Source of the DNA: Octopus sinensis
Lineage: Eukaryota
Assembly (NCBI RefSeq): GCF_006345805.1
Contig: NC_042998.1
Span: 14,446,001-14,510,000 of the forward strand
Direction of reading: 5' to 3'
Length of the DNA: 64,000 nt
A program made the translations under genes and the position numbers. Below, one piece after another: positions 1,379 through 55,169 of the stretch. The first letter of the stretch is position 1. Every line of letters starts with the position of its first letter. The notes under the pieces were generated by a model, which worked only from the letters and a program-made list of their open reading frames with translations, had not been told where the DNA came from and ran no database searches.

Positions 1379-1478
1379 NNNNNNNNNNNNNNNNNNNNNN
1401 NNNNNNNNNNNNNNNNNNNNNNNNNNNNNNNNNNNNNNNNNNNNNNNNNNNNNNNNNNNNNNNNNNNNNNNNNNNNNN
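1379..1478. other. Assembly gap (100 N)
   Basis: Exactly 100 consecutive N; true distance across the gap is unknown. Confidence 0.99.
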
Positions 1479-6402: not shown

Positions 6403-8333
6403 TATGTTTGACTTTTGCTTTATATTTGTACAAGTTGGCTCCAAGTCCCCCAGAGACCTCAAGAGACAACAGGGTTGGAAGTTCATGTTGTTGTTATGCC
6501 TAGTGTGCCATATATTTGTGGGGTGGGGATGTTGTACTAATGAATGTCTAAAAAAAAAGGTTTTTTTTTTTTTTTTTTTTTTAAACCGAAAATTATGTTT
6601 GTTTTAACTTGAGATTACATAGAGAGTATTTTGCGTAGGATATGAGCAGTTCCCATGAGCACTATCTTTTGAACTTCTGCCATTTTTGGGTTTCGTGGTA
6701 TCTGAGTTAGGTAGCTATCAGCCCCTTTTGCTATCATTCCCAGGGCACCTATGACAACAGGTATTGTTTTAGTCTTCAGCTTCCACATTTTGCTGATTTC
6801 TATTTCAAGATCTTTATATTGCTCAGTTTTTGGTAGGTCTTGACAGATACGTTTATATCGATTGGGACAGTCATATCAATGAGGAGGCATGTTCTTTGTT
6901 TGAAGTTTTCAATATGATGTCTGGCCTATTTGCATCTATCTTCTGTCAGTTTGAATGGTGAAGTTCCAGAGGAGTGAGATGTGGTCATTTTCAAGCACTG
7001 GGGGTGGTTTGTGTTCCCACCAGTTTTTTTCATGGGGCAAATCCAGGTTTTTACAGATTACCCAGTGAATATATTGTGCAGCTCTATCGTGCCTGTTGAG
7101 ATACTCTGTAGGCGCTAGAAGACTGCACTTGGAGACCACATGGTCAATGGTTTCATTTTGTTGCTTGCATACACGACACGTTGGACTGCTTCTGATCTTT
7201 AATATGTTGGGCTGGTAGTGTTCTTGTTCTTTGGTAGGCATTGATCTTGAGCTGCTATGATAAACCCCTCTGTTTCAGATTTTAAGCCAGAGGCCATTAG
7301 CCATTGATGGGTCAGGGCTTTGTCGATATCTGCATTATTCGCTCTCTTTGGGTATTTGCCATAGAGAGGTTTTTCTTGCCATTTATTATTCAGAATATCT
7401 AAGGCCGCAGTTTTGGCACGGGTTTTCATGCGCCTAGCTTTTTCTGTGCTTGTTTCTTGTATATCTATCTCTAATTCCGAAATTGGTTGTATTCGGAATT
7501 CACTTAGATATTCCTTTGCCTGTTTTGTGACTGAGTATGATGCTTTCTTGTTTTCATGTTTTGAGACAAGTTTTAGCATCCAGTCCTCAGAGTTTTTCAG
7601 GTAGGTGTCTAGGCCAATTGTAGCAATCTTCATTGTTATTGCCAGTTGCAAAAGACCACGGCCTCCCTCTTTTCTTGGCAGATAGAGTCGTTCTGTATCT
7701 GCCTTAGGGTGGTGCATTCTATGCATTGTCAACAGTTTCCTTATTTTTCTGTCGAGCTGACATATTTCAGTAATTGACCAGTTAACAATATTGAAACTGT
7801 AAGTCACGACTGGTATAGCTAATGCATTGATTGCTTCGATCCTGTTTTCTTGCATTCAGCTCTGTCTTGAGTATTGCTCTCACTCTTCGATAGCATTCTC
7901 TCCTGATCCTTTCCTTCATCTCTGAATGCCTTATTCCGTTCCCTTCAATTATCCCTAGGTACTTGTAGCTCTCCGGGATCTAGTTCTTTTATGACATTCT
8001 GTTGGTCAAGGTTAACGTTAGATGTTTCTGTCATTTTTCCTTTGATAAAGGTAGCCTTTGCACATTTATCGAGGCCGAATTGCATTCTGATGTCGTCACT
8101 GAATTGTTTGACTATCGCTAGTAAGCCCTTGAGTTGTTGATCATTTTTTGCAAAAAGCTTTAAATCATCCATGTAAACGAGATGATTTATATTTTTATCA
8201 AACATTTTATACCCCTACTGCGCATCATTGAGCAGCTTTGAGAGAGGTATTAAGGATAAACAAAAGAGGAGTGGTGACAGTGAGTCACCCTGGAAAATGC
8301 CACACGAAATTTTTACATCACCAGCATTTAGGG
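6401..8333 (-). mobile_element. 5'-truncated R4/Dong-clade non-LTR retrotransposon (RT + CCHC + restriction-like endonuclease)
   Basis: Minus-strand translation gives GIFQGDSLSPLLF, NHLVYMDDLKLFAK, ERLYLPRKEGGRGL, CRVCKQQNETIDHVVSKC...RHD, RPDII...LIDMTVP...KYKDLE and GTAHILRKILSM*. A ~210-bp 3' UTR follows; (TAA)n lies on both flanks. Confidence 0.9.
6615..8333 (-). pseudogene. Disrupted ORF of the Dong-type LINE
   Basis: Split across frames (track ORFs 7945-8205, 7199-7855, 6936-7241), with an in-frame TAG just upstream of the YMDD segment and several frameshifts. Confidence 0.85.
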
Positions 8334-8364
<31 letters not shown>

Positions 8365-9593
8365 TATATTATTATTATTATCTATTCATTATCATTATCA
8401 TTATTACGACTTGGAAAGTTACCTGAATTTTACACGTGTCTGAGGAACAATGAGATAATTAATCGCAAACCTCTCAAGGAGAAATTCAACTGGGACCAAG
8501 CAGATAAACATCTATCGTCGAGAACGACTGAGAACTCAGCGGGTATTCTCAAATTTCGCAATACCAGTGAAATCAAATAGCCTCCATCGACCTTTGTGTG
8601 GGGTCTCATCGCTTTGGTTTGGTTTGACAGCTCAAGATAAGGAGCTGGAACAAACAAAAGCTAAGATATAAACTCTGAAGCAGTTCTCTCCCCTGAAGGA
8701 AAATTTTCACCCTTTCCGCCATCTTACAGTAGTCACTCTCTCCCCCTCTCTTTCACTCTCTCCCTCTCTCTCTTTCTCTTATGTGTTCCCTCTCTTACAC
8801 TTTCTCCCTTGTGTTCTCTCTCTTTCTCTCGTAAGCAACAATAAGCAGTAGCAGCTGCGGTCACCGGTCAACTAGCCACGTTCTTAATTGTTATTTGCCA
8901 ACAGGCCCCATGGATTGTTATTCATTCAATTTAGTTGATTTTGTTCTTGTCATTGCTCTTGGTATTGTTATTCTTGTTCTTGATACTGTTGATGTTGTTG
9001 TTACTGCTATAGTTACCAATGCTGTTTGCAAGATCATAGAACATCCCTCATAGAGCCATCAAATACACAGAATCCCTCGTGAACTTGACTTTGAACAACT
9101 AGTGTTATACAGAACAAAGTGTTTTACATATTTCAGTATTTGTTTTATATCTTCATACGCAAACAATAGCGTGCTTGGCGTTAGTTTACCAACGAGGCAA
9201 TCACCTGGTTCATTGAGTTTCTAACGGTGAGATTGACAAGGGAGAGTTACGATTTCCCGAGGGGCTTCGCTTGGAATGCACCTTTTTCTTCTTTCCTTTC
9301 CTTTTTTTTGCTTTTATGATTGATTTTTTTTTTGGTTTATTTCTTTGGTTTTTCTTCCTCAAATATTGACATCTTGTCCGATATACATCAGTGGAAATAT
9401 ATATTTACACGTACACGCAAGTGCACACAGAGGCATATACACACCTATATATGCAGACGCACACACACATCACATTAACAGGCACAAAGGTGCATGAATA
9501 TAAACACACTTGCAACATACAACATATAAGCATATTAGCGTATACATGAATCCGTGTTCTTGATTTTTTGCTTAATTAGAGCGGTAAAAATCC

Positions 9594-9749
9594 AGGAGTG
9601 GCTGCGTGGTAAGTAGCTTGCTTACCAACCACATGGTTTCGGGTTCGGTCCCACCGCATGACACCTTCTGCAAATGTATTTTACTATACTCTCGGGCCAA
9701 CCGAAGACTTGTGGGTGGATTTGGAAAACGGAAACTGAATGAATCCCGT

Positions 9750-9784
<35 letters not shown>

Positions 9785-9835
9785 CTGTGTTTGTTCCTCC
9801 ACCACCGCTTGACAAAACTTCTCTCTCTTTCTCTC
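9594..9835 (+). mobile_element. tRNA-derived SINE, family B (5' half)
   Basis: GGAGTGGCTGCGTGGTAAGTAGCTTGCTTACCAACCACATGG head, decayed B box, internal (TA)/(TG) tract; homologous to other B copies. Confidence 0.75.
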
Positions 9836-15039: not shown

Positions 15040-15836
15040 TTTCTTTACTGTCCACAAGGGGCTACATACAGGGGGCTACAAACAAGGGGCTACACACAAG
15101 GACAGACAAACGGATTAAGTCGATTATATCGACCCCGGTACGTAACTGGTACTTATTTAATCGACCCCGAAAGGATGAAAGGCAAAGTCGACCTCGGTGG
15201 AATTTGAACTCAGAACGTAGCGGCAGACGAAATACCTATTTCTTTATAACAAACAAGGGCTAAACACAGAGGGGACAAACAAGGACAGACAAACGGATTA
15301 AGTCGATTACATTGACACCAGTGCGTAACTGGTACTTATTTAATCGACCCAGAAAGGATGAAAGACAAGGTCGACCTCGGCAGAATTTGAACTCAGAACG
15401 TAGCGGCAGACGAAATACCTATTTTTTTATAACACACAAGGGGATAAACACAGAGGGGACAAACAAGGACAGACAAACGGATTAAGTCGATTATATCGAC
15501 CCCATTACGTAACTCGTACTTATTTAATCAGCCCCGAAAGGATGAAAAGCAAAGTAGACCTCGGCAGAATTTGAACACAGAACGTAGCTGCAGACGAAAT
15601 GCCTATTTCTTTATAACACACAAGGGGATAAACACAGAGGTGACAAACAAGGACAGACAAACGGATTAAATCGATTACATTGACACCAGTGCGTAACTGG
15701 TACTTAATTTATCGACCCCAAAAGGATGAAAGGCAAAGTCGACCTCGGTGGAATTTGAACTCAGAACGTAACGGCAGACGAACTACCGCTACGCATTTCG
15801 CCCGGCGTGCAAACGTTTCTGCCAGCTCGCCGCCTT
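15040..15836 (-). mobile_element. SINE family A multimer: one head and four ~180-bp bodies
   Basis: A single A-box head at 15790-15836, then a repeated GGTATTTCGTCTGC...GAGTTCAAATTCC...AAAGAAATA unit. Confidence 0.85.
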
Positions 15837-15922
15837 ATTCCGCTTTCCTTCTGCTGCCAATAAGATGATTTGCCCACCTAGAAGACGAGGTGTCTATTCG
15901 TGGCAGAGCAGTATATATGGTT

Positions 15923-16154
15923 AAGGCGGCGAGCTGGCAGAAACGTTATCACGCCGGGCGAAATGTTTAGCAGTATTTCGTCTGCCGCTACGTTCTGAGT
16001 TCAAATTCCGCCGAGGTCGACTTTGCCTTTCATCCTTTCGAGGTCGATAAATTAAGTACCAGTTACGCACTGGGGTCGATATAATCGACTTAATCCGTTT
16101 GACTGTCCTTGTTTGTCCCCTCTGTGTTTAGCCCCTTGTGGGTAGTAAAGAAAT
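15923..16154 (+). mobile_element. SINE family A monomer
   Basis: AAGGCGGCGAGCTGGCAGAAACG head, B box GAGTTCAAATTCC, tail GTAGTAAAGAAATA. Confidence 0.85.
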
Positions 16155-16621
16155 AAGTATATATGGTTAACGTGGATAAAAATGTCGTTCCCAAACATAA
16201 TCTCATCATCTACAACATGTACGTTGAACAGAGAGGGAGAGAGGTGGGGACATACTGGTAGGCTTTAAGAAATTTTGAAAATAACTGTATCCTTAGATTA
16301 ACAATCCAACATAATTCTAATATTCAAAAAATCAGACAAAAACTCCCTTTCGATATAAATGTTTAAATAAAAGAAATTCATAGAGCAAATCAGCACGTAT
16401 AATGAGGGTTTGGTGCTACTAGCTGCTATTTTTAGCTGAGATGAATTTAATCATTTGTTTCCTGGACTGGACATAGCGATATTTCCATCCTGTTATTTCT
16501 AGAATTTTGCGGTTTCTGAGTCTCACTCCTTTCATTCCTGATTTTCTTACCCTTTTTCTTGACATCCTTAACTGGGCACGCTTTGGATCTGACTCTGTAA
16601 CCCTCAAATATCATAAGGACA

Positions 16622-16844
16622 TGCTGGTAGAAACGTTAGCACGCCGGGCGAAATTCGTAGCAGTATTTCGTCTGTCTTTACGTTCTGAGTTCAAATTCCG
16701 CCGAGGTCGACTTTGCCTTTCATCCTTTCGGGGTCGATAAATTAAGTACCAGTTACGCACTGGAGTCGATGTAATCGACTTAATCCCTTTGTCTGTCCTT
16801 GTTTGTCCCCTCTATGTTTAGCCCCTTGTGGGTAGTAAAGAAAT
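16622..16844 (+). mobile_element. SINE family A monomer
   Basis: Same head, B box and tail as 15923-16154. Confidence 0.85.
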
Positions 16845-16984
16845 ATATTTTCCACGTCGCTTCACTACAAATCACCTCTCTTTAGCCCTGTTTCAACCAC
16901 TACCTTATACGGTGATATAAATGTGATGACCAGTTACGTATCTACACCACTTTCGATATCTCTTATCTTCCCTACTGAATTACC

Positions 16985-17147: not shown

Positions 17148-17524
17148 ACTCTTTTACTCTTTTACTTGTTTCAGTCATTTGACTGCGGCCATACAGGAGC
17201 ACCACCTTTTAGTCGAGCAAATCGACCCCAGGACTTATTCTTTGTAAGCCTAGTACTTATTCTGTCGGTCTCTTTTGCCGAACCACTAAGTTACGGGGAC
17301 GTAAACACACAAGCAATGTTGGGGAGACAAACACAAACACACACACATTTATATATACATAACATATATACGACGGGCTTCTTTCAGTTTCCGTCTACCA
17401 AATCCACTAACAAGGCTTTGGTCGGCCTGAGGCTATAGTAGAAGACACTTGCCCAAGGTGCCACGCAGTGGGACTGAACCCAGAACAATGTGGTTGGTAA
17501 GCAAGCTCCTTACCACATAGCCAC
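17148..17524 (-). mobile_element. SINE family B, near full length
   Basis: Head TGGCTATGTGG, B box GGGTTCAGTCCC, CORE-like CCTTGGGCAAGT, (AAAAGAGT)n tail. Confidence 0.85.
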
Positions 17525-18139
17525 TTCGATTAGAAGTGGCAGAAAATAAATACTGCTTGATCATACAAGATTTTCTACTGTATAATATCTGTAAAATATC
17601 AGTTTGTTCTGTTAAGGTTAGGACTAGGGTAAGATTAGCATTAACATAGCTACTTACATGAGCAATTCTAAATGTTATAGTTGGAGTTATCGCTATCTTC
17701 AAAATTTTCTGTTAAATTATTTGGAATGTTTTTATCCATTAATTGGTCATTAATTTTTTCCGTCCTTTTATTTATTTAATGGCGTCCTTCGTTTTAGAGC
17801 TTTTTTTATTTATTATCTGTTTGAATTGGCTGCATTGATGTACATCGTCATCACTACTACCAACCAAAACAGCGCAACAGCAGCCGTTCAAGAATTTGGA
17901 CCTGGAGATCTCCATTTCCAGCGACTTCGAGGGCCACCTCCCAGTGGTGTCGGGCGTCAACGAAGAACCCTCGACTACAACAAGACGACCAAACTTTTTT
18001 TTTCCAAGGTATACGGTCTCCCGTCCCTAAGCCCTAGACCATCACCTAAGCACCCTTACCCGTCTTGTTGCTTAGCAACAACAACAACAACATCAACAAC
18101 AGCAACAAAAACAACAACAACATCAATAATTATAATAGT

Positions 18140-18718
18140 CCTTTCTACTCTAGGCACAAGACCCGAAATTTTGGGGAAGGGGACAAGTCGATTAGAAGGA
18201 CACCAGTACACAACTGATACTTAATTTATTGACCCCGAAAGGATGAAAGGCAAAGTCGACCTCGGCGGAATTTGAACTCAGAATGTAAAGACAAGACAAA
18301 ATACCTATTTCTTTACTACCCACAAGGGGATAAACACCGAGAGGACAAACAAGGACAGACAAATGGATTAAGTCGGTTACATCGACCCCAGTGCGTAACT
18401 GGTACTTATTTAATCGACCCCGAAAGGATGAAGGGCAAAGTCGGCCTCGGCGGAATTTCAGCTCAGAACCGGTAGACGAAATACCTATTTCTTTACTACC
18501 TATAAGGGGCTAAACACTGAGAGGACAAACAAGTACAGACAAACGGATTAAGTCGATTATATTGACCCCAGTGCGTAACTGGTACTTATTTAATCGACCC
18601 CGAAAGGATGAAAGACAAAGTCGACCTCGGCGGGATTTAAACTCATAACGTAACGGCAGACGAAATACCGCAAAGCATTTTGCCCGGCGTGCTAACGCTT
18701 CTGCCAGCTCGCCGCCTT
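18140..18718 (-). mobile_element. SINE family A multimer (3 bodies; terminal body has the alternative tail)
   Basis: One head at about 18670-18718 and repeated bodies; the 3'-most unit ends ...TTGTGCCTAGAGTAGAAAG instead of ...GTAGTAAAGAAATA. Confidence 0.8.
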
Positions 18719-21339: not shown

Positions 21340-21378
<39 letters not shown>

Positions 21379-21387
21379 TGTGTGTGT

Positions 21388-21568
21388 GTGGCTTTGTTGT
21401 AAGAAGCTTCCTTCCCAACCACATGGTTCTGGGTTCAATCCAGCTGTGTGGCACCTTTGGGAAAATTGCTGCTGTAGCCTTCAGCGAACCAAAGCTTCCT
21501 GAATGGATTTGGTAGACAGAAACTGAAAGAAACCAGTCGTGTATATAAATATATATAGATATATAGAT

Positions 21569-21602
<34 letters not shown>

Positions 21603-23899: not shown

Positions 23900-24303
23900 C
23901 TTTTACTCTTTTATTCTTTTACTTGTTTCAGTCATTTGACTGTGGCCATGCTGGAGCACCGCCTTTTAGTCGAGTAAATCGAACCCAGGACTTATTCTTT
24001 TGTAAGCCTAGTACTTATTCTATCTTACTCTTTTGCCGAACGCTAAATTACGGGGACGTAAACACACGACCATCAGTTGTCAAGCGATGTTGGGGGGACA
24101 AATGCAGACAGACAAATTTGTACACACACATATATATATATATACATATACGACGGGCTTCTTTCAGTTTCCGTCTACCAAATCCACTCATAAGGCTTTG
24201 GCCGGCCCGAAGCTATAATAAAGACACTTGCCCAAAGTTCCACGCAGTGGGACTGAACCCGAAACAATGTGGTTGGTAAGCAAGATACTTACCACACAGC
24301 CAA
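23900..24303 (-). mobile_element. SINE family B, near full length
   Basis: Same head, B box, internal (TA) tract and tail as 17148-17524. Confidence 0.85.
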
Positions 24304-24444
24304 TTCTATGATTAATATATATGTCAGGGAAAAAAAGACACAATTTTTCGGATTGTTTGCAGTACTTGACAGCATTCTGATATTGGTTTCAAATTTCGAG
24401 GCAGGTGATAAGACGATTGCATTGATCCTACGAGCTATGGCGGC

Positions 24445-25124: not shown

Positions 25125-25990
25125 TATTTTCTACTCTAAGCACAAGGCCCGAAACTTTTTGAAGAGGGTGCTAGTCGATTAGATCGACCCCAGTACGCAA
25201 CTGGTACTTAATTTATCGAACCCGAAAGGATGAAAGGCAAAGTCGACCTCAGCGGAATTTGAACTCAGAACGTAAAGACAGAAGTACATATTTCTTTACT
25301 ACCCACAAGGGGTTAAACACAGAGAGGACAAACAAGGACAGACAAACGGATTAAGCCGATTACATCAACCCCAGTGCGTAACTGGTACTTATTTAATCGA
25401 CCCCGAAAGGATGAAATGTAAAGTCCACCTCGGCGGAATTTGAACTCAGAACGTAAAGACAGACGAAATACCTATTCCTTTACTACCCACAAGGAGCTAA
25501 ACACAGGGGGGACAAACAAGGACAGACAAACAGATTAAGCCGATTACATCGACACCAGTGCGTAACTGGTACTTATTTAATCGACCCGGAAAGGATAAAA
25601 AGCAAAGTCGACTTCGACGGAATTTAAACTCAGAATGTAACGGCAGACGAAATACTGCTAAGCATTTCGCCCGGCGTGCTAACGATGCTTATTTCTTTAC
25701 TTCCCGAAAGGGGCTACACACAGAGGCGACAAACAAGGATAGACAAACGGATTAAGTTGATTATATCGACCCCAGTGCGTAAATGGTACTTATTTAATCG
25801 ACCCCTAAAGGATGAATGGCAAAGTCGACGTCGGCGGAATTTGAACTCAGAACGTAACGGCAGACAAAATACCTATTTCTTTACTACCCACAAGGGGCTA
25901 AACACAGAGAGGACAAACAAGGCAAAGTCGACCTCGGCGGAATTTGAACTCAGAACGCAACGGCTAACGATTCCGCCAGCTCGCAGCCTC
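25125..25990 (-). mobile_element. SINE family A multimer (about 5 units, one internal partial head)
   Basis: Repeated ~180-bp bodies; the 3'-most unit has the alternative tail; partial head near 25650-25685. Confidence 0.8.
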
Positions 25991-26395
25991 AGCTTTTACG
26001 TCTATTCCTAAGGCGCTAACTTACTTAGACACGCCGATGGCTTCGAATAACACAGTAGGAACAGGATTACTACCTTTTGTCCTGCATATTTAAATGCACA
26101 TTCAAATATGTGATAATTCATTTTATAATTCAATTAACCTAGAATGAAGTAATCAATATGTACAAACTGCTAAGTTAATTAGCAATGACAATTGATAATA
26201 ATTCACGCAGAACAGCGAGAAACCAAACAATAAAGCATTCGTTTAGTCTTGATACATTCATTCAGATTCGAACACGAATTTCTGATCATCACCGGAGAAG
26301 ACTTCCTCCCTTTAGAAGATGTATGCTGGTAACACATGCAATTCAGCAGTTTAAGTGAACTTTGATGGAAAACATTGATGGAAAAAACAAATGAT

Positions 26396-26400
26396 AAAAA
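26396..26400 (-). terminator. Pol III terminator (T5) of the tRNA-Lys gene
   Basis: TTTTT on the minus strand 12 nt after the discriminator base, with a second T-run about 10 nt further on. Confidence 0.7.
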
Positions 26401-26412
26401 TATTACCATTTG

Positions 26413-26505
26413 CGCCCACAGGGGGACTTGAACCCGCGACCCTCAGATTCCTTTGTTTTCTATTAACTTAAAAGTCTGATGCTCTACCGACTGAGCTATG
26501 TAGGC
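26413..26505 (-). tRNA. tRNA-Lys-TTT: tRNA-Lys(UUU) with 20-nt intron (26449-26468) at position 37/38
   Basis: GCCTACA TA GCTC AGTCGGTA GAGC A TCAGA CTTTTA [AGTTAATAGAAAACAAAGGA] A TCTGA GGGTC GCGGG TTCAAGT CCCCC TGTGGGC G. This gives a 73-nt cloverleaf with anticodon TTT at 26470-26472, intact A/B boxes and a paired acceptor stem (one G-U). There is one C50:C64 mismatch in the T stem. Confidence 0.9.
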
Positions 26506-26939
26506 AGCTGACGTAGATTCCCTTTGTATAGTATATAATGCTTAGATGATGCTTGGGTGACTAGTTTAGTTATGGACGTGTGTATCTTTGATTTTTAAAG
26601 AGATGTAGCCAGAGGAATATTTTATGGAAGTGAGAGAGGAGAGGTGGTAGGTGGCTTCTCTTTATACCAGTCTATACCAGTGTGTGTGAATGTACACATA
26701 TATCTAGGAGTACGTGTATGTGTAGGAAAAAGACATTTCTTTCTGTAAAGATACGATTTGTGTCGACGAAGTAAATATGCATGAATGGATGTATGTAGGT
26801 AGGTATTCATGCATACATGTATGTATGTATGTTTTATGTTTTCTCATGTATATAGTAACATATCTAGACATGCTCATATATATATATATTTATATGATAA
26901 AATTACAGAATTTTACAGTTCTAGTGATGGATTGGATCT

Positions 26940-29294: not shown

Positions 29295-29706
29295 TATTTC
29301 TTTACTACCCACAAGGGGCTAAACACAGAGGGGACAAACAAGGACAGACAAAGGGATTAAGTCGATTACATTGACCCCAGTGCGTAACTGGTACTTAATT
29401 TATCGACCCCGAAAGGATGAAAGGCAAAGTCGACCTCGGCGGAATTTGAGCTCAGAACGTAGCGGTAGACGAAATACCTATTTCTTTACTACCCACAAGG
29501 GGCTAAACACAGAGGGGACACACAAGGACAGACCAACGGATTGAGTTGATTATATCGACGCCACTGCGTAAGTGGTACTTAATTTATCGACCCCGAAAGA
29601 ATGAAAGGCAATGTCGACCTCGGTGGAATTTGAACCCAGAACACGTAGCGTCAGACGAAATACGGCTACGCATTTCGCCCGGCGTGCTAACGTTTCTGCC
29701 AGCTCG
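29295..29706 (-). mobile_element. SINE family A dimer
   Basis: One head and two bodies joined at AAAGAAATA|GGTATTTCG. Confidence 0.85.
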
Positions 29707-35157: not shown

Positions 35158-35449
35158 CGTGTAGATACTGAAGTTTCCAAAGGACATTTGGACAAATGCT
35201 TTATCTAAGGTACCGGATGAACCTACATCGTGACAGGAAACACAATGAAAAGCAAGTCTTTCCAAAACGCCACGCCACAGAGAAAGAATTTAGAAAAGAA
35301 ATTCGGCAAATTTGGAATAAGAACCAATCAGGATAGAGGAGATGCCCTTTGCATGGTCGCAGCATTTGGCTGAAAACCAAAACATGAAGAATGTGTGTGC
35401 ATGTGTGTGTGTGTTCGTGCGCGCGTGTGTGTTTGTGTATGTATGTAAG

Positions 35450-36012
<563 letters not shown>

Positions 36013-44698: not shown

Positions 44699-45445
44699 AT
44701 GCGGCAAACTGGCGAAAAACGTTAGCACACTGGGCGAAATGCGTAGCGGTATTTCGTCTGCCGTTACATTCTGAGTTCAAATTCCGCCGAGGTCGACTTT
44801 GCCTTTCATCCTTTCGGGGTCGATAAATTAAGCACCAGTTACGGACTGGGGTCGATATAATCGACTTAATCCGTTTGACCTCTCTGTGTTTAGCCCCTTG
44901 TGGGTAGTAAATAAATAGGTATATCGTCTGCCGTTACGTTCTGAGTTCAAATTCCGCCGAGGTTGACTTTGCCTTCAATCCTTTCGGGGTCGATAAATTA
45001 AGTACCAGTTACGCACCAGTGCGTAATCGACTTAATCCGTTTGTCTATCCTTGTTTGTCCTATCTGTGTTTAACACCTTGTGGGCAGTAAAGAAATAGGT
45101 ATATCGTCTGCCGTAATGTTCTGGGTTCAAATTCCGCCGAGGACGACTTTGCCTTTCATCCTTTCGGGGTCGATAAATTAAGTACCAGTTACGCACTGGG
45201 GTCGATGTAATCGACTTAATCCCTATTTCTGTCCTTGTTTGTCCTCTCTGTGTTTAGCTTCTTGTGGGTAGTAAAGAAATAGGTATATCGTCTGCCGTTA
45301 CGTTCAAATTTCGCCGATGTCGACTTTGCCTTTTATCCTTTCGGGGTCGATGAAATAAGTACCAGTTACGCACTGGGGTCGATATAATCGATTAGCCCTC
45401 TTCCCCGAAAACTTTCAAGGCTTTGCGCCCAGAGTAGAAATAATT
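44699..45445 (+). mobile_element. SINE family A multimer: one head and four bodies, terminal body with alternative tail
   Basis: Junctions AAATA|GGTATATCGTCTGCC near 44915, 45095 and 45280; the last unit ends ...CCCAGAGTAGAAATAATTATT. Confidence 0.85.
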
Positions 45446-47060: not shown

Positions 47061-47327
47061 CAAATAAAACAATAAAACAAACAATATATACGTGCGTGTA
47101 TATGTGTGTGTAAGTGTGTGTGTGTGTGTGCGTGTGTGTGATTGTACATGTGTGTATGCTCAGGATTTAATTGCGAGCTGCTATTAGTTTCATGCCTATG
47201 ATAATACAATGGTCGAACAAGCCTGTACAGCGTGCCGTGTATTTTCAGGAAACTGACTATGAATACGCAAACTATAAATATATAAATATATAATAGTAGG
47301 AGTGGCTGTGTGGTATATAAATATATA

Positions 47328-47560
47328 TTTCTTTACTACCCACAAGGGGCTAAACACAGAGGGGACAAACAAGGACAGACAAAGGGATTAAATCGATTAC
47401 ATCGACCCCAGTGCGTAACTGGTACTTAATTTATCGACCCCGAAAGAATGAAAGGCAAAGTCGACCTCGGCGGAATTTGAACTCGGAACGCAACGACAGA
47501 CGAAATACGGCTACGAATTTCGCCCGGCGTGCTAACGTTTCTACCAGCTCGCCGCCTTAA
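47328..47560 (-). mobile_element. SINE family A monomer with 21-bp flanking direct repeat
   Basis: Full head to tail; TGTGTGGTATATAAATATATA at 47307-47327 and 47566-47586. Confidence 0.85.
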
Positions 47561-47751
47561 ACCGATGTGTGGTATATAAATATATAATAGTAGAGCATGC
47601 ATGCACCCTCTGCACGTGATTAAACTCGGAATGTTTGTGAGGAAGCCAGTGACTCAATTAGCTGACTTTTCCGATGGCACGCAGTTGTCCATAATGGTTG
47701 AATGGTCAAATCCAAGCTTCTCTACTAGTTCCTCATGTGTTGCAATAGGAT

Positions 47752-48150
47752 TGGCTCTGTGGTAAGTAGTTTGCTTACCAACCACATGGTTCCGGGTTCA
47801 GTCCCACTGCGTGGCACCTTGGGCAAGTGTCTTCTACTATAGCCTCGGGTCGACCAAAGCCTTGTGAGTGGATTTAGTAGACGGAAACTGAAAGAAGCCC
47901 GTCGTATATATGTATATATGTATATATGCATGTGTGTGTTTGTGTGAGTGTGTTTGTCCTCCTAGCATTGCTTGAAAACCGATGCAGGTGTGTTTATGTC
48001 CCCATTACTTAGCGGTTCGGCAAAAGAGACCGATAGAATAAGTACTGGGCTTACAAAAGAATAAGTCCCGGGGTCGAGTTGCTCGATTAAAGGCGGTGCT
48101 CCAGCATGGCCGCAGTCAAATGACTGAAACAAGTAAAAGAGTAAAAGAGT
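47752..48150 (+). mobile_element. SINE family B, full length
   Basis: Head, B box, short internal tract, (AAAAGAGT)2 tail. Confidence 0.85.
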
Positions 48151-54572: not shown

Positions 54573-54804
54573 AAGGCGGCGAGCTGGTAGAAACGTTAGT
54601 ACGCCGGGCGAAATGCGTAGCCGTATTTCGTCTGCCGTTACGTTCTGAGTTCAAATTCCGCCGAGGTCCACTTTACCTTTCATTCTTTCGGGGTCGATTA
54701 AATAAGTACCAGTTACGCACTGGGGTCGATATAATCGACTTAATCCCTTTGTCTGTCCTTTTTTGTCCCTTCTGTGTTTAGCCCCTTGTGGGTAGTAAAG
54801 AAAT
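54573..54804 (+). mobile_element. SINE family A monomer
   Basis: Full head, B box and first tail type. Confidence 0.85.
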
Positions 54805-55169
54805 AGGTTATTTTTACTACTTTTCTCACTGAATTCTGTGTTCGTTTTCTTTTTCTTTTTTTTTCCATTTGTGATTTGATCTTTTATTTTTGATCTTCTA
54901 TAGAAATGAAGATATTTCCTTCGTTTTGCTGATTTCTTTCCACGAAATAAGAAGATACATTGCGGAACTGATGTTTTAATGAGTTGTGTCTATTTATCAC
55001 CCGATAAGACACATCTGCACCGCTGGATGCTCCTGAACCAGTTGTTAAGTGACCCATCCGTGAAGAATCGATGCTAAATGTGACGAAATAATTGTCGTTA
55101 TTAATAATAAATTCTCATATTTTCCATCTTCCGTCTTTTATTTACCATAACTGTGTTTGTGTGTGCATA

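What the first reader, a model, noticed from the sequence alone, without database searches (positions are those of the whole stretch)
26396..26540. tRNA-Lys(UUU) with a canonical spliceable intron and a remodelled acceptor stem
Seen: a 20-nt intron between positions 37 and 38. Its AAAG pairs with C32-U35 and its third-last base is G, giving the C32:G anticodon-intron pair used by TSEN. The acceptor stem GCCUACA/UGUGGGC differs from the usual animal GCCCGGA/UUCGGGC yet stays paired, implying selection on structure. A T5 terminator follows and a TATA-like element lies about 30 nt upstream. Established: in human, Drosophila and C. elegans, intron-containing tRNAs are essentially Tyr(GUA), Ile(UAU), Leu(CAA) and in vertebrates Arg(UCU), whereas Lys(UUU) introns are familiar from budding yeast; animal tRNA introns are circularised by RtcB. 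I cannot check whether this is already reported for molluscs.
Basis: partly seen in the sequence, partly recalled or inferred. Interest (0 to 1): 0.7.

Follow-up and report, generated by a model that had tools for sequence, protein, structure and literature searches.

The report
Intron-bearing lysine tRNA gene, probably functional

Summary
A tRNA-Lys(UUU) gene lies on the minus strand at 26413-26505. It has a 20-nt intron at the canonical 37/38 position (26449-26468).

- **Splicing features:** the intron can draw a textbook 3-4-3 bulge-helix-bulge with a C32:G(-3) pair. Only 0.19% of intron shuffles do this.
- **Gene quality:** the acceptor stem GCCUACA/UGUGGGC is fully paired. The only flaw is C50:C64. 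The gene scores 56.7 bits on Rfam tRNA and has A and B boxes, T5 and T6 terminators, and TATATA at -32.
- **Novelty falls:** one metagenome scan for the same tRNA core with an insert at 37/38 found 107 contigs. Every one of the 87 distinct introns has G at -3. Twenty of 115 genes also have a non-Watson-Crick 50:64 pair. Some contigs carry animal-type genes (CDK inhibitor, LRRNT-LRR).
- **What stays unusual:** no other gene found has the window's acceptor stem.

I read it as a probably functional, lineage-specific Lys(UUU) gene, spliced by TSEN and RtcB. The host is probably an octopus, but that rests on repeats I recall from memory. Expression, gene copy number and mollusc-wide distribution could not be tested here. 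Interest is moderate to low.

The parts
26413..26505 (-). tRNA-Lys(UUU) gene, 93 nt including the intron. CCA is not encoded; the genome reads CAA after G73.
   Evidence: ARAGORN. Rfam RF00005 at 56.7 bits. Sequence.
26469..26505 (-). Exon 1, tRNA positions 1-37: acceptor 5' strand GCCUACA, D arm, anticodon stem 5' strand, C32 U33 U34 U35 U36 A37.
26449..26468 (-). 20-nt intron AGUUAAUAGAAAACAAAGGA between positions 37 and 38. G2U3U4 pairs with A12A13C14. A15A16A17G18 pairs with U35U34U33C32. G19, A20 and A38 form the 3-nt 3' bulge.
26413..26448 (-). Exon 2, positions 38-73: anticodon stem 3' strand, variable loop GGGUC, T arm GCGGG/UUCAAGU/CCCCC with C50:C64, acceptor 3' strand UGUGGGC, discriminator G73.
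26487..26498 (-). A-box-like internal promoter element, positions 8-19, TAGCTCAGTCGG.
   Evidence: Read and compared with the TRGCNNAGTGG consensus from my own knowledge. Invariant in all 32 aligned homologues, but the scan pattern fixed positions 10-48.
26424..26434 (-). B-box-like internal promoter element, positions 52-62, GGTTCAAGTCC.
   Evidence: Read. Consensus GGTTCGANNCC from my own knowledge.
26396..26400 (-). T5 run, 12 nt after the discriminator: the likely RNA polymerase III terminator.
26382..26387 (-). T6 run: back-up terminator.
26532..26537 (-). TATATA at -32..-27. A possible upstream TATA-like element, with weak statistical support.
   Evidence: 7.6% chance per 11-nt slot. Only 16 of 101 environmental homologues have a TATA-like motif at -40..-18.

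Best explanation
This is a nuclear, RNA polymerase III-transcribed tRNA-Lys(UUU) gene of an invertebrate genome. The host is probably an octopus, judged from repeats I recall from memory, not from a tool result.

**Proposed mechanism**
1. Transcription starts from the internal A and B boxes, perhaps helped by the TATATA at -32, and ends at the T5 run.
2. The pre-tRNA keeps the mature cloverleaf. The anticodon loop and the intron form a bulge-helix-bulge-like motif with three parts: a 3-nt bulge U36 A37 A(i1) holding the 5' cut site, a 4-bp helix C32-U35 with intron A15-G18, and a 3-nt bulge G19 A20 A38 holding the 3' cut site.
3. The tRNA splicing endonuclease (TSEN) cuts at 37|i1 and i20|38.
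4. An RtcB-type ligase joins the exons to give the anticodon loop CUUUUAA. It may also circularise the 20-nt intron.

**Shown versus inferred**
- Shown: the sequence, the possible structures, the comparative conservation of these features, and covariation in the stems.
- Inferred: transcription, cleavage, ligation, lysine charging and intron circles.

The altered acceptor and T stems are a lineage-specific, structurally compensated variant, not decay. The intron belongs to a widespread class of Lys(UUU) introns in marine eukaryotes.
For: **The gene is well formed**
- Two independent tRNA finders call it.
- Its Rfam score of 56.7 bits lies inside the 52.3-62.3 range of 20 environmental intron-bearing Lys(UUU) genes.
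- The canonical cloverleaf of the spliced RNA is -22.3 kcal/mol, 2.4 above its MFE. Homologues show a similar gap of 2.1-3.6.

**The intron looks spliceable**
- The 3-4-3 BHB register exists and is rare by chance, at 0.19% of shuffles.
- G at intron -3 occurs in 115/115 genes and 87/87 distinct introns. Position -4 pairs with U33 in 74/87.
- In Drosophila the proximal pair is C-G in all 16 intronic tRNAs, the 3' bulge is invariantly 3 nt, and the C of that pair lies 6 nt from the exon end (PMC6614914). All three hold here.

**The stem changes look selected**
- Every difference from the common animal sequence falls in pairs 4-7:66-69 and 49-50:64-65. These are the only pairs that covary in the family: 98.5% of cells are paired, 7 pairs change on both sides, and 0 of 500 shuffles reach the observed covariation.
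- 50:64 is non-Watson-Crick in 20/115 genes.
- Human LysRS needs the UUU anticodon and charges acceptor minihelices without sequence specificity (PMC9976931). The stem change should therefore not alter identity.

**Other points**
- T5 and T6 runs follow the gene.
- It is a single copy in the window, and about 400 nt on each side are unique there, so it is not a SINE head.
- In related environmental loci, intron identity is 75% against 37% for the flanks, so such introns are under selection.
Against: - There are no expression data.
- No second copy or orthologue with the GCCUACA stem was found: 0 of 115 metagenome genes and 0 in genome contigs.
- C.C is a poor mismatch, and the spliced cloverleaf is the least stable of those compared, at -22.3 against -23.3 to -27.5 kcal/mol.
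- The thermodynamic MFE of the pre-tRNA prefers another register, UUUU:AGGA, by 2 kcal/mol in the isolated arm. It does not draw the canonical T arm.
- The trailer before the T run is 12 nt, longer than in the homologues, whose T4+ runs start within 10 nt.
- The gene sits in repeat-rich DNA.
- The tRNAscan-SE pseudogene test could not be run.
Confidence: 0.68

Rival explanations
1. It is an inactive or decaying copy (pseudogene) of the lineage's Lys(UUU) gene. It still looks intact but is not expressed or not functional, for example because C50:C64 weakens the T arm.
For: - C50:C64 mismatch and U4.G69 wobble.
- Lowest cloverleaf stability among those compared.
- Unique acceptor stem with no homologue found.
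- Repeat-rich neighbourhood.
- Longer trailer than the homologues.
Against: - No change falls at any invariant or tertiary position, in the D or anticodon arms, or at the intron's critical positions.
- Three of the four changed acceptor pairs differ on both sides from the usual animal stem.
- 50:64 mismatches are common in apparently intact homologues that have terminators.
- The Rfam score is mid-range for the family.
Confidence: 0.24
2. It was acquired horizontally, for example from a giant virus or a mobile element, and is not a native host gene.
For: Giant-virus-like contigs carry intron-bearing Lys(UUU) genes with the same core, a U4.G69 wobble, a CCCCC 3' T-stem strand, a 50:64 mismatch and a UUCAAGU loop (L013/L109, L038/L110, L108).
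Against: - It differs from the viral genes at 8 of 73 positions by my own count on the alignment, including the discriminator (G here, U there). That is no closer than to cellular classes.
- I saw no viral ORFs near it. The flanks are host repeats and unique non-coding DNA.
Confidence: 0.04
3. It is a tRNA-derived SINE head or a chance tRNA-like sequence.
For: The window is full of tRNA-derived repeats.
Against: - It is a single copy with no repeat body or tail, and a terminator lies 12 nt downstream.
- It is a complete cloverleaf with a full-length model match at E 1.5e-09.
- Neither tRNA half matched in any of 100 shuffles.
Confidence: 0.02

Closest known systems
Saccharomyces cerevisiae tRNA-Lys(UUU) genes (tK(UUU)), all intron-containing
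   Same: - Same anticodon, with the intron at 37/38 and of similar size.
- The intron is specific to the UUU isoacceptor and absent from CUU. The same pattern is seen in environmental locus L048.
- Removing the yeast intron gives a respiratory-medium growth defect (PMC6582322).
   Different: - Fungal exon sequences differ.
- Fungi ligate with Trl1 and leave linear introns, whereas animals use RtcB and make circles (PMC6614914, PMC4536317).
- My recollection that the yeast intron also starts AG and has G at -3 was not checked here.
Animal intron-bearing tRNAs (Tyr-GUA, Ile-UAU, Leu-CAA, vertebrate Arg-UCU), the tricRNA sources
   Same: Canonical 37/38 intron, C-G proximal pair, invariant 3-nt 3' bulge, and 6 nt from the C of that pair to the exon end (PMC6614914). 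All are present here.
   Different: The isoacceptor differs. Lys(UUU) is not among the families listed for model animals (PMC12168002; PMC10275265).
Intronless vertebrate and insect tRNA-Lys(UUU) (human tRNALys3 type)
   Same: Positions 8-48 are identical to L007, and the T loop differs only at position 57. L007 carries the human-type exons GCCCGGA.../...UUCGGGCG. That L007 equals the human sequence rests on my memory.
   Different: - The window gene has a 20-nt intron.
- Positions 4-6, 67 and 68 are changed.
- T-stem pair 49:65 is flipped from C:G to G:C.
- 50:64 is C:C instead of A:U.
Environmental intron-bearing Lys(UUU) genes (L001-L107, L119/L120)
   Same: - Identical positions 10-48, by design of the scan.
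- Intron lengths 10-32 nt with a mode of 19-20. A at +1 in 68 and G at +2 in 63 of 87 distinct introns.
- G(-3) in all.
- Recurrent 50:64 mismatch.
- T-run terminators.
- The same A-stem-loop-AAAG-NN intron design in L027, L015 and L050 (class B). Intron 3' end CAAAGGA in L068.
   Different: - None has the GCCUACA/UGUGGGC stem or C:C at 50:64.
- No other sequence similarity to the window exists, so none comes from the same lineage.
- Their taxonomy is unresolved.
Archaeal bulge-helix-bulge splicing motif
   Same: The window intron can draw the strict 3-nt bulge, 4-bp helix, 3-nt bulge.
   Different: - Eukaryal TSEN measures from the mature domain and needs only a relaxed motif (PMC6614914, PMC10275265).
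- In the environmental set only 17 of 87 introns have the full 4-bp helix.

Membership tests
Cytoplasmic class I tRNA (Rfam RF00005) | Cloverleaf scoring above the family's gathering score over the full model. | tested here: met
   56.7 bits against 29, model positions 1-71 of 71. ARAGORN agrees.
Cytoplasmic class I tRNA (Rfam RF00005) | Invariant and semi-invariant nucleotides: U8, A14, G18 G19, A21, U33, G53, U54 U55 C56, A58, C61. | tested here: met
   All are present by direct reading. Apart from G53 and C56, which are only nearly invariant (at least 90%), these columns are invariant across the 32 aligned sequences.
tRNA-Lys(UUU) isoacceptor | Anticodon UUU at positions 34-36 after intron removal; UUU is sufficient for lysine identity with mammalian LysRS. 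| tested here: met
   The anticodon loop is CUUUUAA after splicing. The identity rule comes from PMC9976931. Charging itself was not tested.
tRNA-Lys(UUU) isoacceptor | Aminoacylation with lysine and use in translation. | not testable with these tools
   Needs tRNA-seq or charging assays.
RNA polymerase III type 2 gene | Internal A and B boxes and a downstream T-run terminator. | tested here: met
   TAGCTCAGTCGG and GGTTCAAGTCC read. T5 at +13 and T6 at +26. Consensus sequences are from my own knowledge.
Eukaryal canonical tRNA intron (TSEN substrate) | Intron between positions 37 and 38. | tested here: met
   A one-base ambiguity arises from the flanking A residues; the spliced product is the same.
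Eukaryal canonical tRNA intron (TSEN substrate) | Proximal (anticodon-intron) pair between position 32 and intron -3, followed by a 3-nt bulge holding the 3' cut site. | tested here: met
   C32:G18, with bulge G19 A20 A38. G(-3) occurs in 87/87 homologous introns. This register is 2 kcal/mol above the MFE of the isolated arm.
Eukaryal canonical tRNA intron (TSEN substrate) | Cleavage by TSEN, exon ligation, and intron circularisation by RtcB. | not testable with these tools
   Biochemical or RNA-seq evidence is needed.
tRNA pseudogene or tRNA-derived SINE | Dispersed multi-copy family, loss of invariant bases or pairing, no nearby terminator. | tested here: not met
   One copy in the 64 kb window with unique flanks. 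Invariant bases are intact. One mismatch, which is also found in 17% of homologues. A terminator is present. Whole-genome copy number and the tRNAscan-SE pseudogene score were not tested.
Molluscan (octopus) genome origin | Sequence identity to a named mollusc genome. | tested here: inconclusive
   Six copies of a SINE and a second repeat match octopus repeats only from my memory. No paper holds the sequence. The closest relatives of the RT fragment are 58% identical and unnamed.

The most novel reading that the evidence does not exclude
The Lys(UUU) intron may be an old, selectively kept feature of many marine animal lineages, possibly shared with fungi, that was lost in the vertebrate, insect and nematode models. 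It has a conserved design: A at +1, G at -3, and an A-rich tract pairing with U33-U35. On this reading the window's lineage would have combined it with a rebuilt acceptor and T stem. That rebuilding changes the tRNA's 3' end, which is the part retroelements use as a primer, so it could reflect conflict with LTR elements.
Probability: 0.2. Interest if true: 0.55.

Novelty: new member of a known kind. Interest (0 to 1): 0.3.

Why it matters
Textbook lists of intron-bearing tRNAs in animals come from a few model species: Tyr, Ile-UAU, Leu-CAA and Arg-UCU.

This gene and the 100+ environmental relatives suggest that Lys(UUU) is a further, widespread intron-bearing family in marine eukaryotes, apparently including animals. 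Its proximal pair is strictly conserved. In one group of related loci the intron sequence is clearly under selection.

This gives a second family, after Tyr, in which to ask why tRNA introns are kept. The question has some footing, because removing the yeast Lys(UUU) intron already gives a respiratory growth defect.

For this window alone, the finding is a good annotation rather than a discovery.

Tried and rejected
- **Naming the host organism.** Homologues of an RT fragment were at most 58% identical and mostly unnamed. Their contigs carry only ENA sample codes. ORFs next to the tRNA are not on record. No paper holds the SINE sequence. The octopus assignment therefore rests on my memory only.
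- **Naming the organisms behind the metagenome contigs.** CDI and LRR proteins had only unnamed metagenome relatives. Sample IDs 3300004085, 3300027377 and SRR6231233 appear in no searchable paper. I believe they are gutless-oligochaete metagenomes but could not verify it.
- **Literature on Lys(UUU) introns in molluscs or other invertebrates.** Searches found nothing. The supplement of PMC12168002 is not held.
- **Exact 5' exon in bacterial and archaeal genome contigs.** No match.
- **LTR primer-binding site complementary to this tRNA's 3' end,** sought as indirect evidence of expression. The only match in the window is the gene itself.
- **Bacterial-type promoter and terminator scan.** Not applicable and found nothing.
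- **Two mariner-like ORFs.** No Pfam hit.
- **A whole-window Pfam scan.** Prepared but dropped as low value.

Full report
**1. What is there**

ARAGORN finds exactly one tRNA in the 64-kb window: tRNA-Lys(UUU) on the minus strand at 26412-26505. With intron reporting on, it gives a 20-nt intron in the anticodon loop. Rfam's tRNA model matches 26413-26505 end to end at 56.7 bits (gathering score 29, E 1.5e-09), with a 21-nt insert after position 37.

In RNA sense the gene reads GCCUACA-UA-GCUC-AGUCGGUA-GAGC-A-UCAGA-CUUUUA-[AGUUAAUAGAAAACAAAGGA]-A-UCUGA-GGGUC-GCGGG-UUCAAGU-CCCCC-UGUGGGC-G.

- Exon 1 is 26469-26505, the intron is 26449-26468, and exon 2 is 26413-26448.
- Neither tRNA half has another match in the window at up to 3 mismatches, and no shuffle gave one.

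**2.

All of them hold.

- The acceptor stem has seven pairs: six Watson-Crick and U4.G69.
- C50:C64 is the only mismatch.
- All invariant and tertiary nucleotides, the D arm, the anticodon arm, the variable loop and the T loop are standard.
- CCA is not encoded.
- A T5 run starts 13 nt after G73 (26396-26400) and a T6 run at +26.
- TATATA lies at -32..-27 (26532-26537). However, 7.6% of 11-nt slots in this window hold such a hexamer, and only 16 of 101 homologues have one, so I give it little weight.

**3. Is the intron spliceable?**

1. The anticodon stem, 27-31 with 39-43.
2. A 3-nt bulge of G19, A20 and A38, holding the 3' cut site.
3. A 4-bp helix of C32-U35 with intron A15-G18.
4. A 3-nt bulge of U36, A37 and A(i1), holding the 5' cut site.
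5. A 3-bp helix of G2U3U4 with A12A13C14, closed by a 7-nt loop.

Only 0.19% of shuffles of the intron give this arrangement.

Thermodynamically, this register is -2.6 kcal/mol for the isolated arm. A slipped register (UUUU with AGGA) is -4.6. The whole pre-tRNA in cloverleaf plus BHB form is -22.3, against an MFE of -26.2. Energy alone therefore does not choose the canonical form, as is usual for unmodified tRNA sequences.

The comparative evidence is stronger. In Drosophila the proximal pair is C-G in all 16 intronic tRNAs. The 3' bulge is always 3 nt, and the C of that pair is always 6 nt from the exon end (PMC6614914). The window gene meets all three conditions.

**4. Relatives elsewhere**

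I scanned the metagenome collection once. The pattern was the D and anticodon-arm core, a 6-36-nt insert at 37/38, then the 3' anticodon stem and variable loop.

- The scan returned 107 contigs.
- The viral collection gave 3 more.
- The bacterial and archaeal genome collection gave one contaminated MAG contig.

Parsing gave 115 genes with 87 distinct introns and 31 distinct spliced sequences.

- Intron length is 10-32 nt, with a mode of 19-20.
- Among the 87 distinct introns, 68 have A at +1 and 63 have G at +2.
- G at -3 occurs in 115 of 115 genes and 87 of 87 distinct introns. Neighbouring positions are mixed.
- Position -4 can pair with U33 in 74 of 87 introns.
- 113 of 115 genes have a fully paired acceptor stem.
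- 93 of 101 genes have a T4+ run, all starting within 10 nt.

Their Rfam scores are 52.3-62.3 bits, which bracket the window gene.

Some introns share the window's design of A, a stem-loop, AAAG, then two bases (L027, L015, L050). L068 shares the 3' end CAAAGGA.

The intron-bearing Lys(UUU) gene is therefore not a one-off.

**5. Who are these relatives?**

- About 19 loci sit on giant-virus-like contigs or dense tRNA arrays.
- Three loci of the largest class (L009, L079, L063) each have a CDK-inhibitor (CDI) ORF downstream of the tRNA, about 1.4 kb away in L063. The domain lies in the N-terminal half, as in animal Cip/Kip proteins.
- L030 and L025 carry LRR ORFs, with an LRRNT domain in L030.
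- These features point to animals, but I could not name the taxa. All homologues are unnamed metagenome proteins, and the sample codes are in no searchable paper.
- I believe several samples are gutless-oligochaete metagenomes. That is memory, not a result.

Three further observations came from these loci.

- Within the largest class, intron identity between loci is 75% against 37% for the flanks, so the intron is under selection there.
- In L048 the neighbouring Lys(CUU) gene has no intron.
- None of the contigs shares any other sequence with the window.

**6. The altered stems**

On the alignment of the 32 distinct spliced sequences, 98.5% of cells in the cloverleaf are paired. Seven pairs change on both sides, and no shuffle reaches the observed covariation.

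- The variable pairs are 3:70-7:66, 49:65 and 50:64.
- The window's differences fall only in 4-7:66-69 and 49-50:64-65.
- Pair 50:64 is unpaired in 6 of 32 distinct sequences and 20 of 115 genes: U.C in 10, C.U in 5 and A.C in 5.
- The mismatch is therefore a family trait, not a decay mark.
- No other gene has GCCUACA/UGUGGGC or C.C at 50:64.

Human LysRS relies on the UUU anticodon and is not sequence-specific for the acceptor helix (PMC9976931). Lysine identity should therefore be kept.

One caveat applies. My scan fixed positions 10-48, so their invariance in the set says nothing.

**7. Surroundings**

The window is AT-rich (about 36% G+C) and full of microsatellites.

- It holds six copies of a tRNA-like SINE.
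- It holds a second 180-220-bp repeat family that ends about 440 bp from the tRNA.
- It holds a non-LTR reverse-transcriptase remnant.
- It holds a 100-N gap.
- The tRNA and about 400 nt on each side are unique in the window.
- No protein-coding gene is evident nearby.

**8. Verdict**

The gene is real and its intron has every sequence feature of an animal TSEN substrate. The stem changes look selected rather than decayed.

I give 0.68 to a functional, spliced Lys(UUU) gene and 0.24 to an intact-looking but inactive copy. Horizontal acquisition, a SINE head or a chance match account for the small remainder.

The claim of rarity among animals is weakened by the environmental set. It is not settled, because taxonomy and the mollusc-wide picture need tRNAscan-SE on whole genomes. 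I found no paper that reports Lys(UUU) introns in molluscs or other invertebrates. Surveys of GtRNAdb name Tyr, Ile-UAU, Leu-CAA, Arg-UCU and Met-CAU as the intron-rich families (PMC12168002).

Noticed in passing
window 9583-9797(+), 21373-21587(+), 35439-35653(+), 47736-47950(+), 24104-24318(-), 17325-17539(-): Six copies of a roughly 170-bp tRNA-like SINE, each ending in a (TA/TG)n tail. This is the only hint at the host organism, and it is unverified.
   Followed up: partly
window 25400-25970, and copies near 15040-16160, 16630-16850, 18185-18700, 29295-29690, 44720-45390, 47319-47540, 54594-54814: A second repeat family of 180-220-bp units, partly tandem, with a tRNA-like T arm (GAGTTCAAATTCCGCCGAGGTCGACTTTGCC). 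One block ends about 440 bp downstream of the Lys gene.
   Followed up: partly
window 6726-8328 (-): Remnant of a non-LTR retrotransposon reverse transcriptase (RVT_1 and zf-RVT, both just below Pfam cut-offs). The closest relatives are 58% identical. Named relatives are from corals, a sea star and a hydrozoan.
   Followed up: partly
window 1379-1478: A run of 100 N: an assembly gap.
   Followed up: no
L013/L109 (97.6-kb contig), L038/L110 (87.9-kb GVMAG contig), L108, L037: Giant-virus-like contigs carry Lys(UUU) genes with 10-24-nt introns at 37/38, all with G at -3. L037 has 23 tRNA genes in 12 kb. The viral tRNA introns seem to follow the host splicing rule.
   Followed up: partly
L119/L120 (contig CBDBEG010000035.1 of a 'Rubritalea sp.' MAG): A tandem array of 1054-bp units, each with Asn(GUU, intron), Glu(CUC) and Lys(UUU, intron) genes. 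It looks like eukaryotic DNA binned into a bacterial genome.
   Followed up: partly
L068 1448-1541, L027 1058-1148, L057 97-186, L119 122-212: tRNA-Asn(GUU) genes with 17-21-nt introns sit beside the intron-bearing Lys(UUU) genes. Asn is another family not on the usual animal list.
   Followed up: no
L009, L079, L063 (also L111): A Lys(UUU) gene lies upstream of a CDK-inhibitor (CDI domain) ORF in three different metagenomes. Across class A loci, a conserved YGA sits just 5' of the tRNA, and the intron is far more conserved than the flanks.
   Followed up: partly
L007 (OFDO01002803.1, 1609 bp): A Lys(UUU) gene with the human-type acceptor and T stems and a 22-nt intron lies on a short AT-rich contig. 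Next to it is a 325-aa ORF that looks bacterial (methyltransferase-like by eye). The pairing is unexplained.
   Followed up: no
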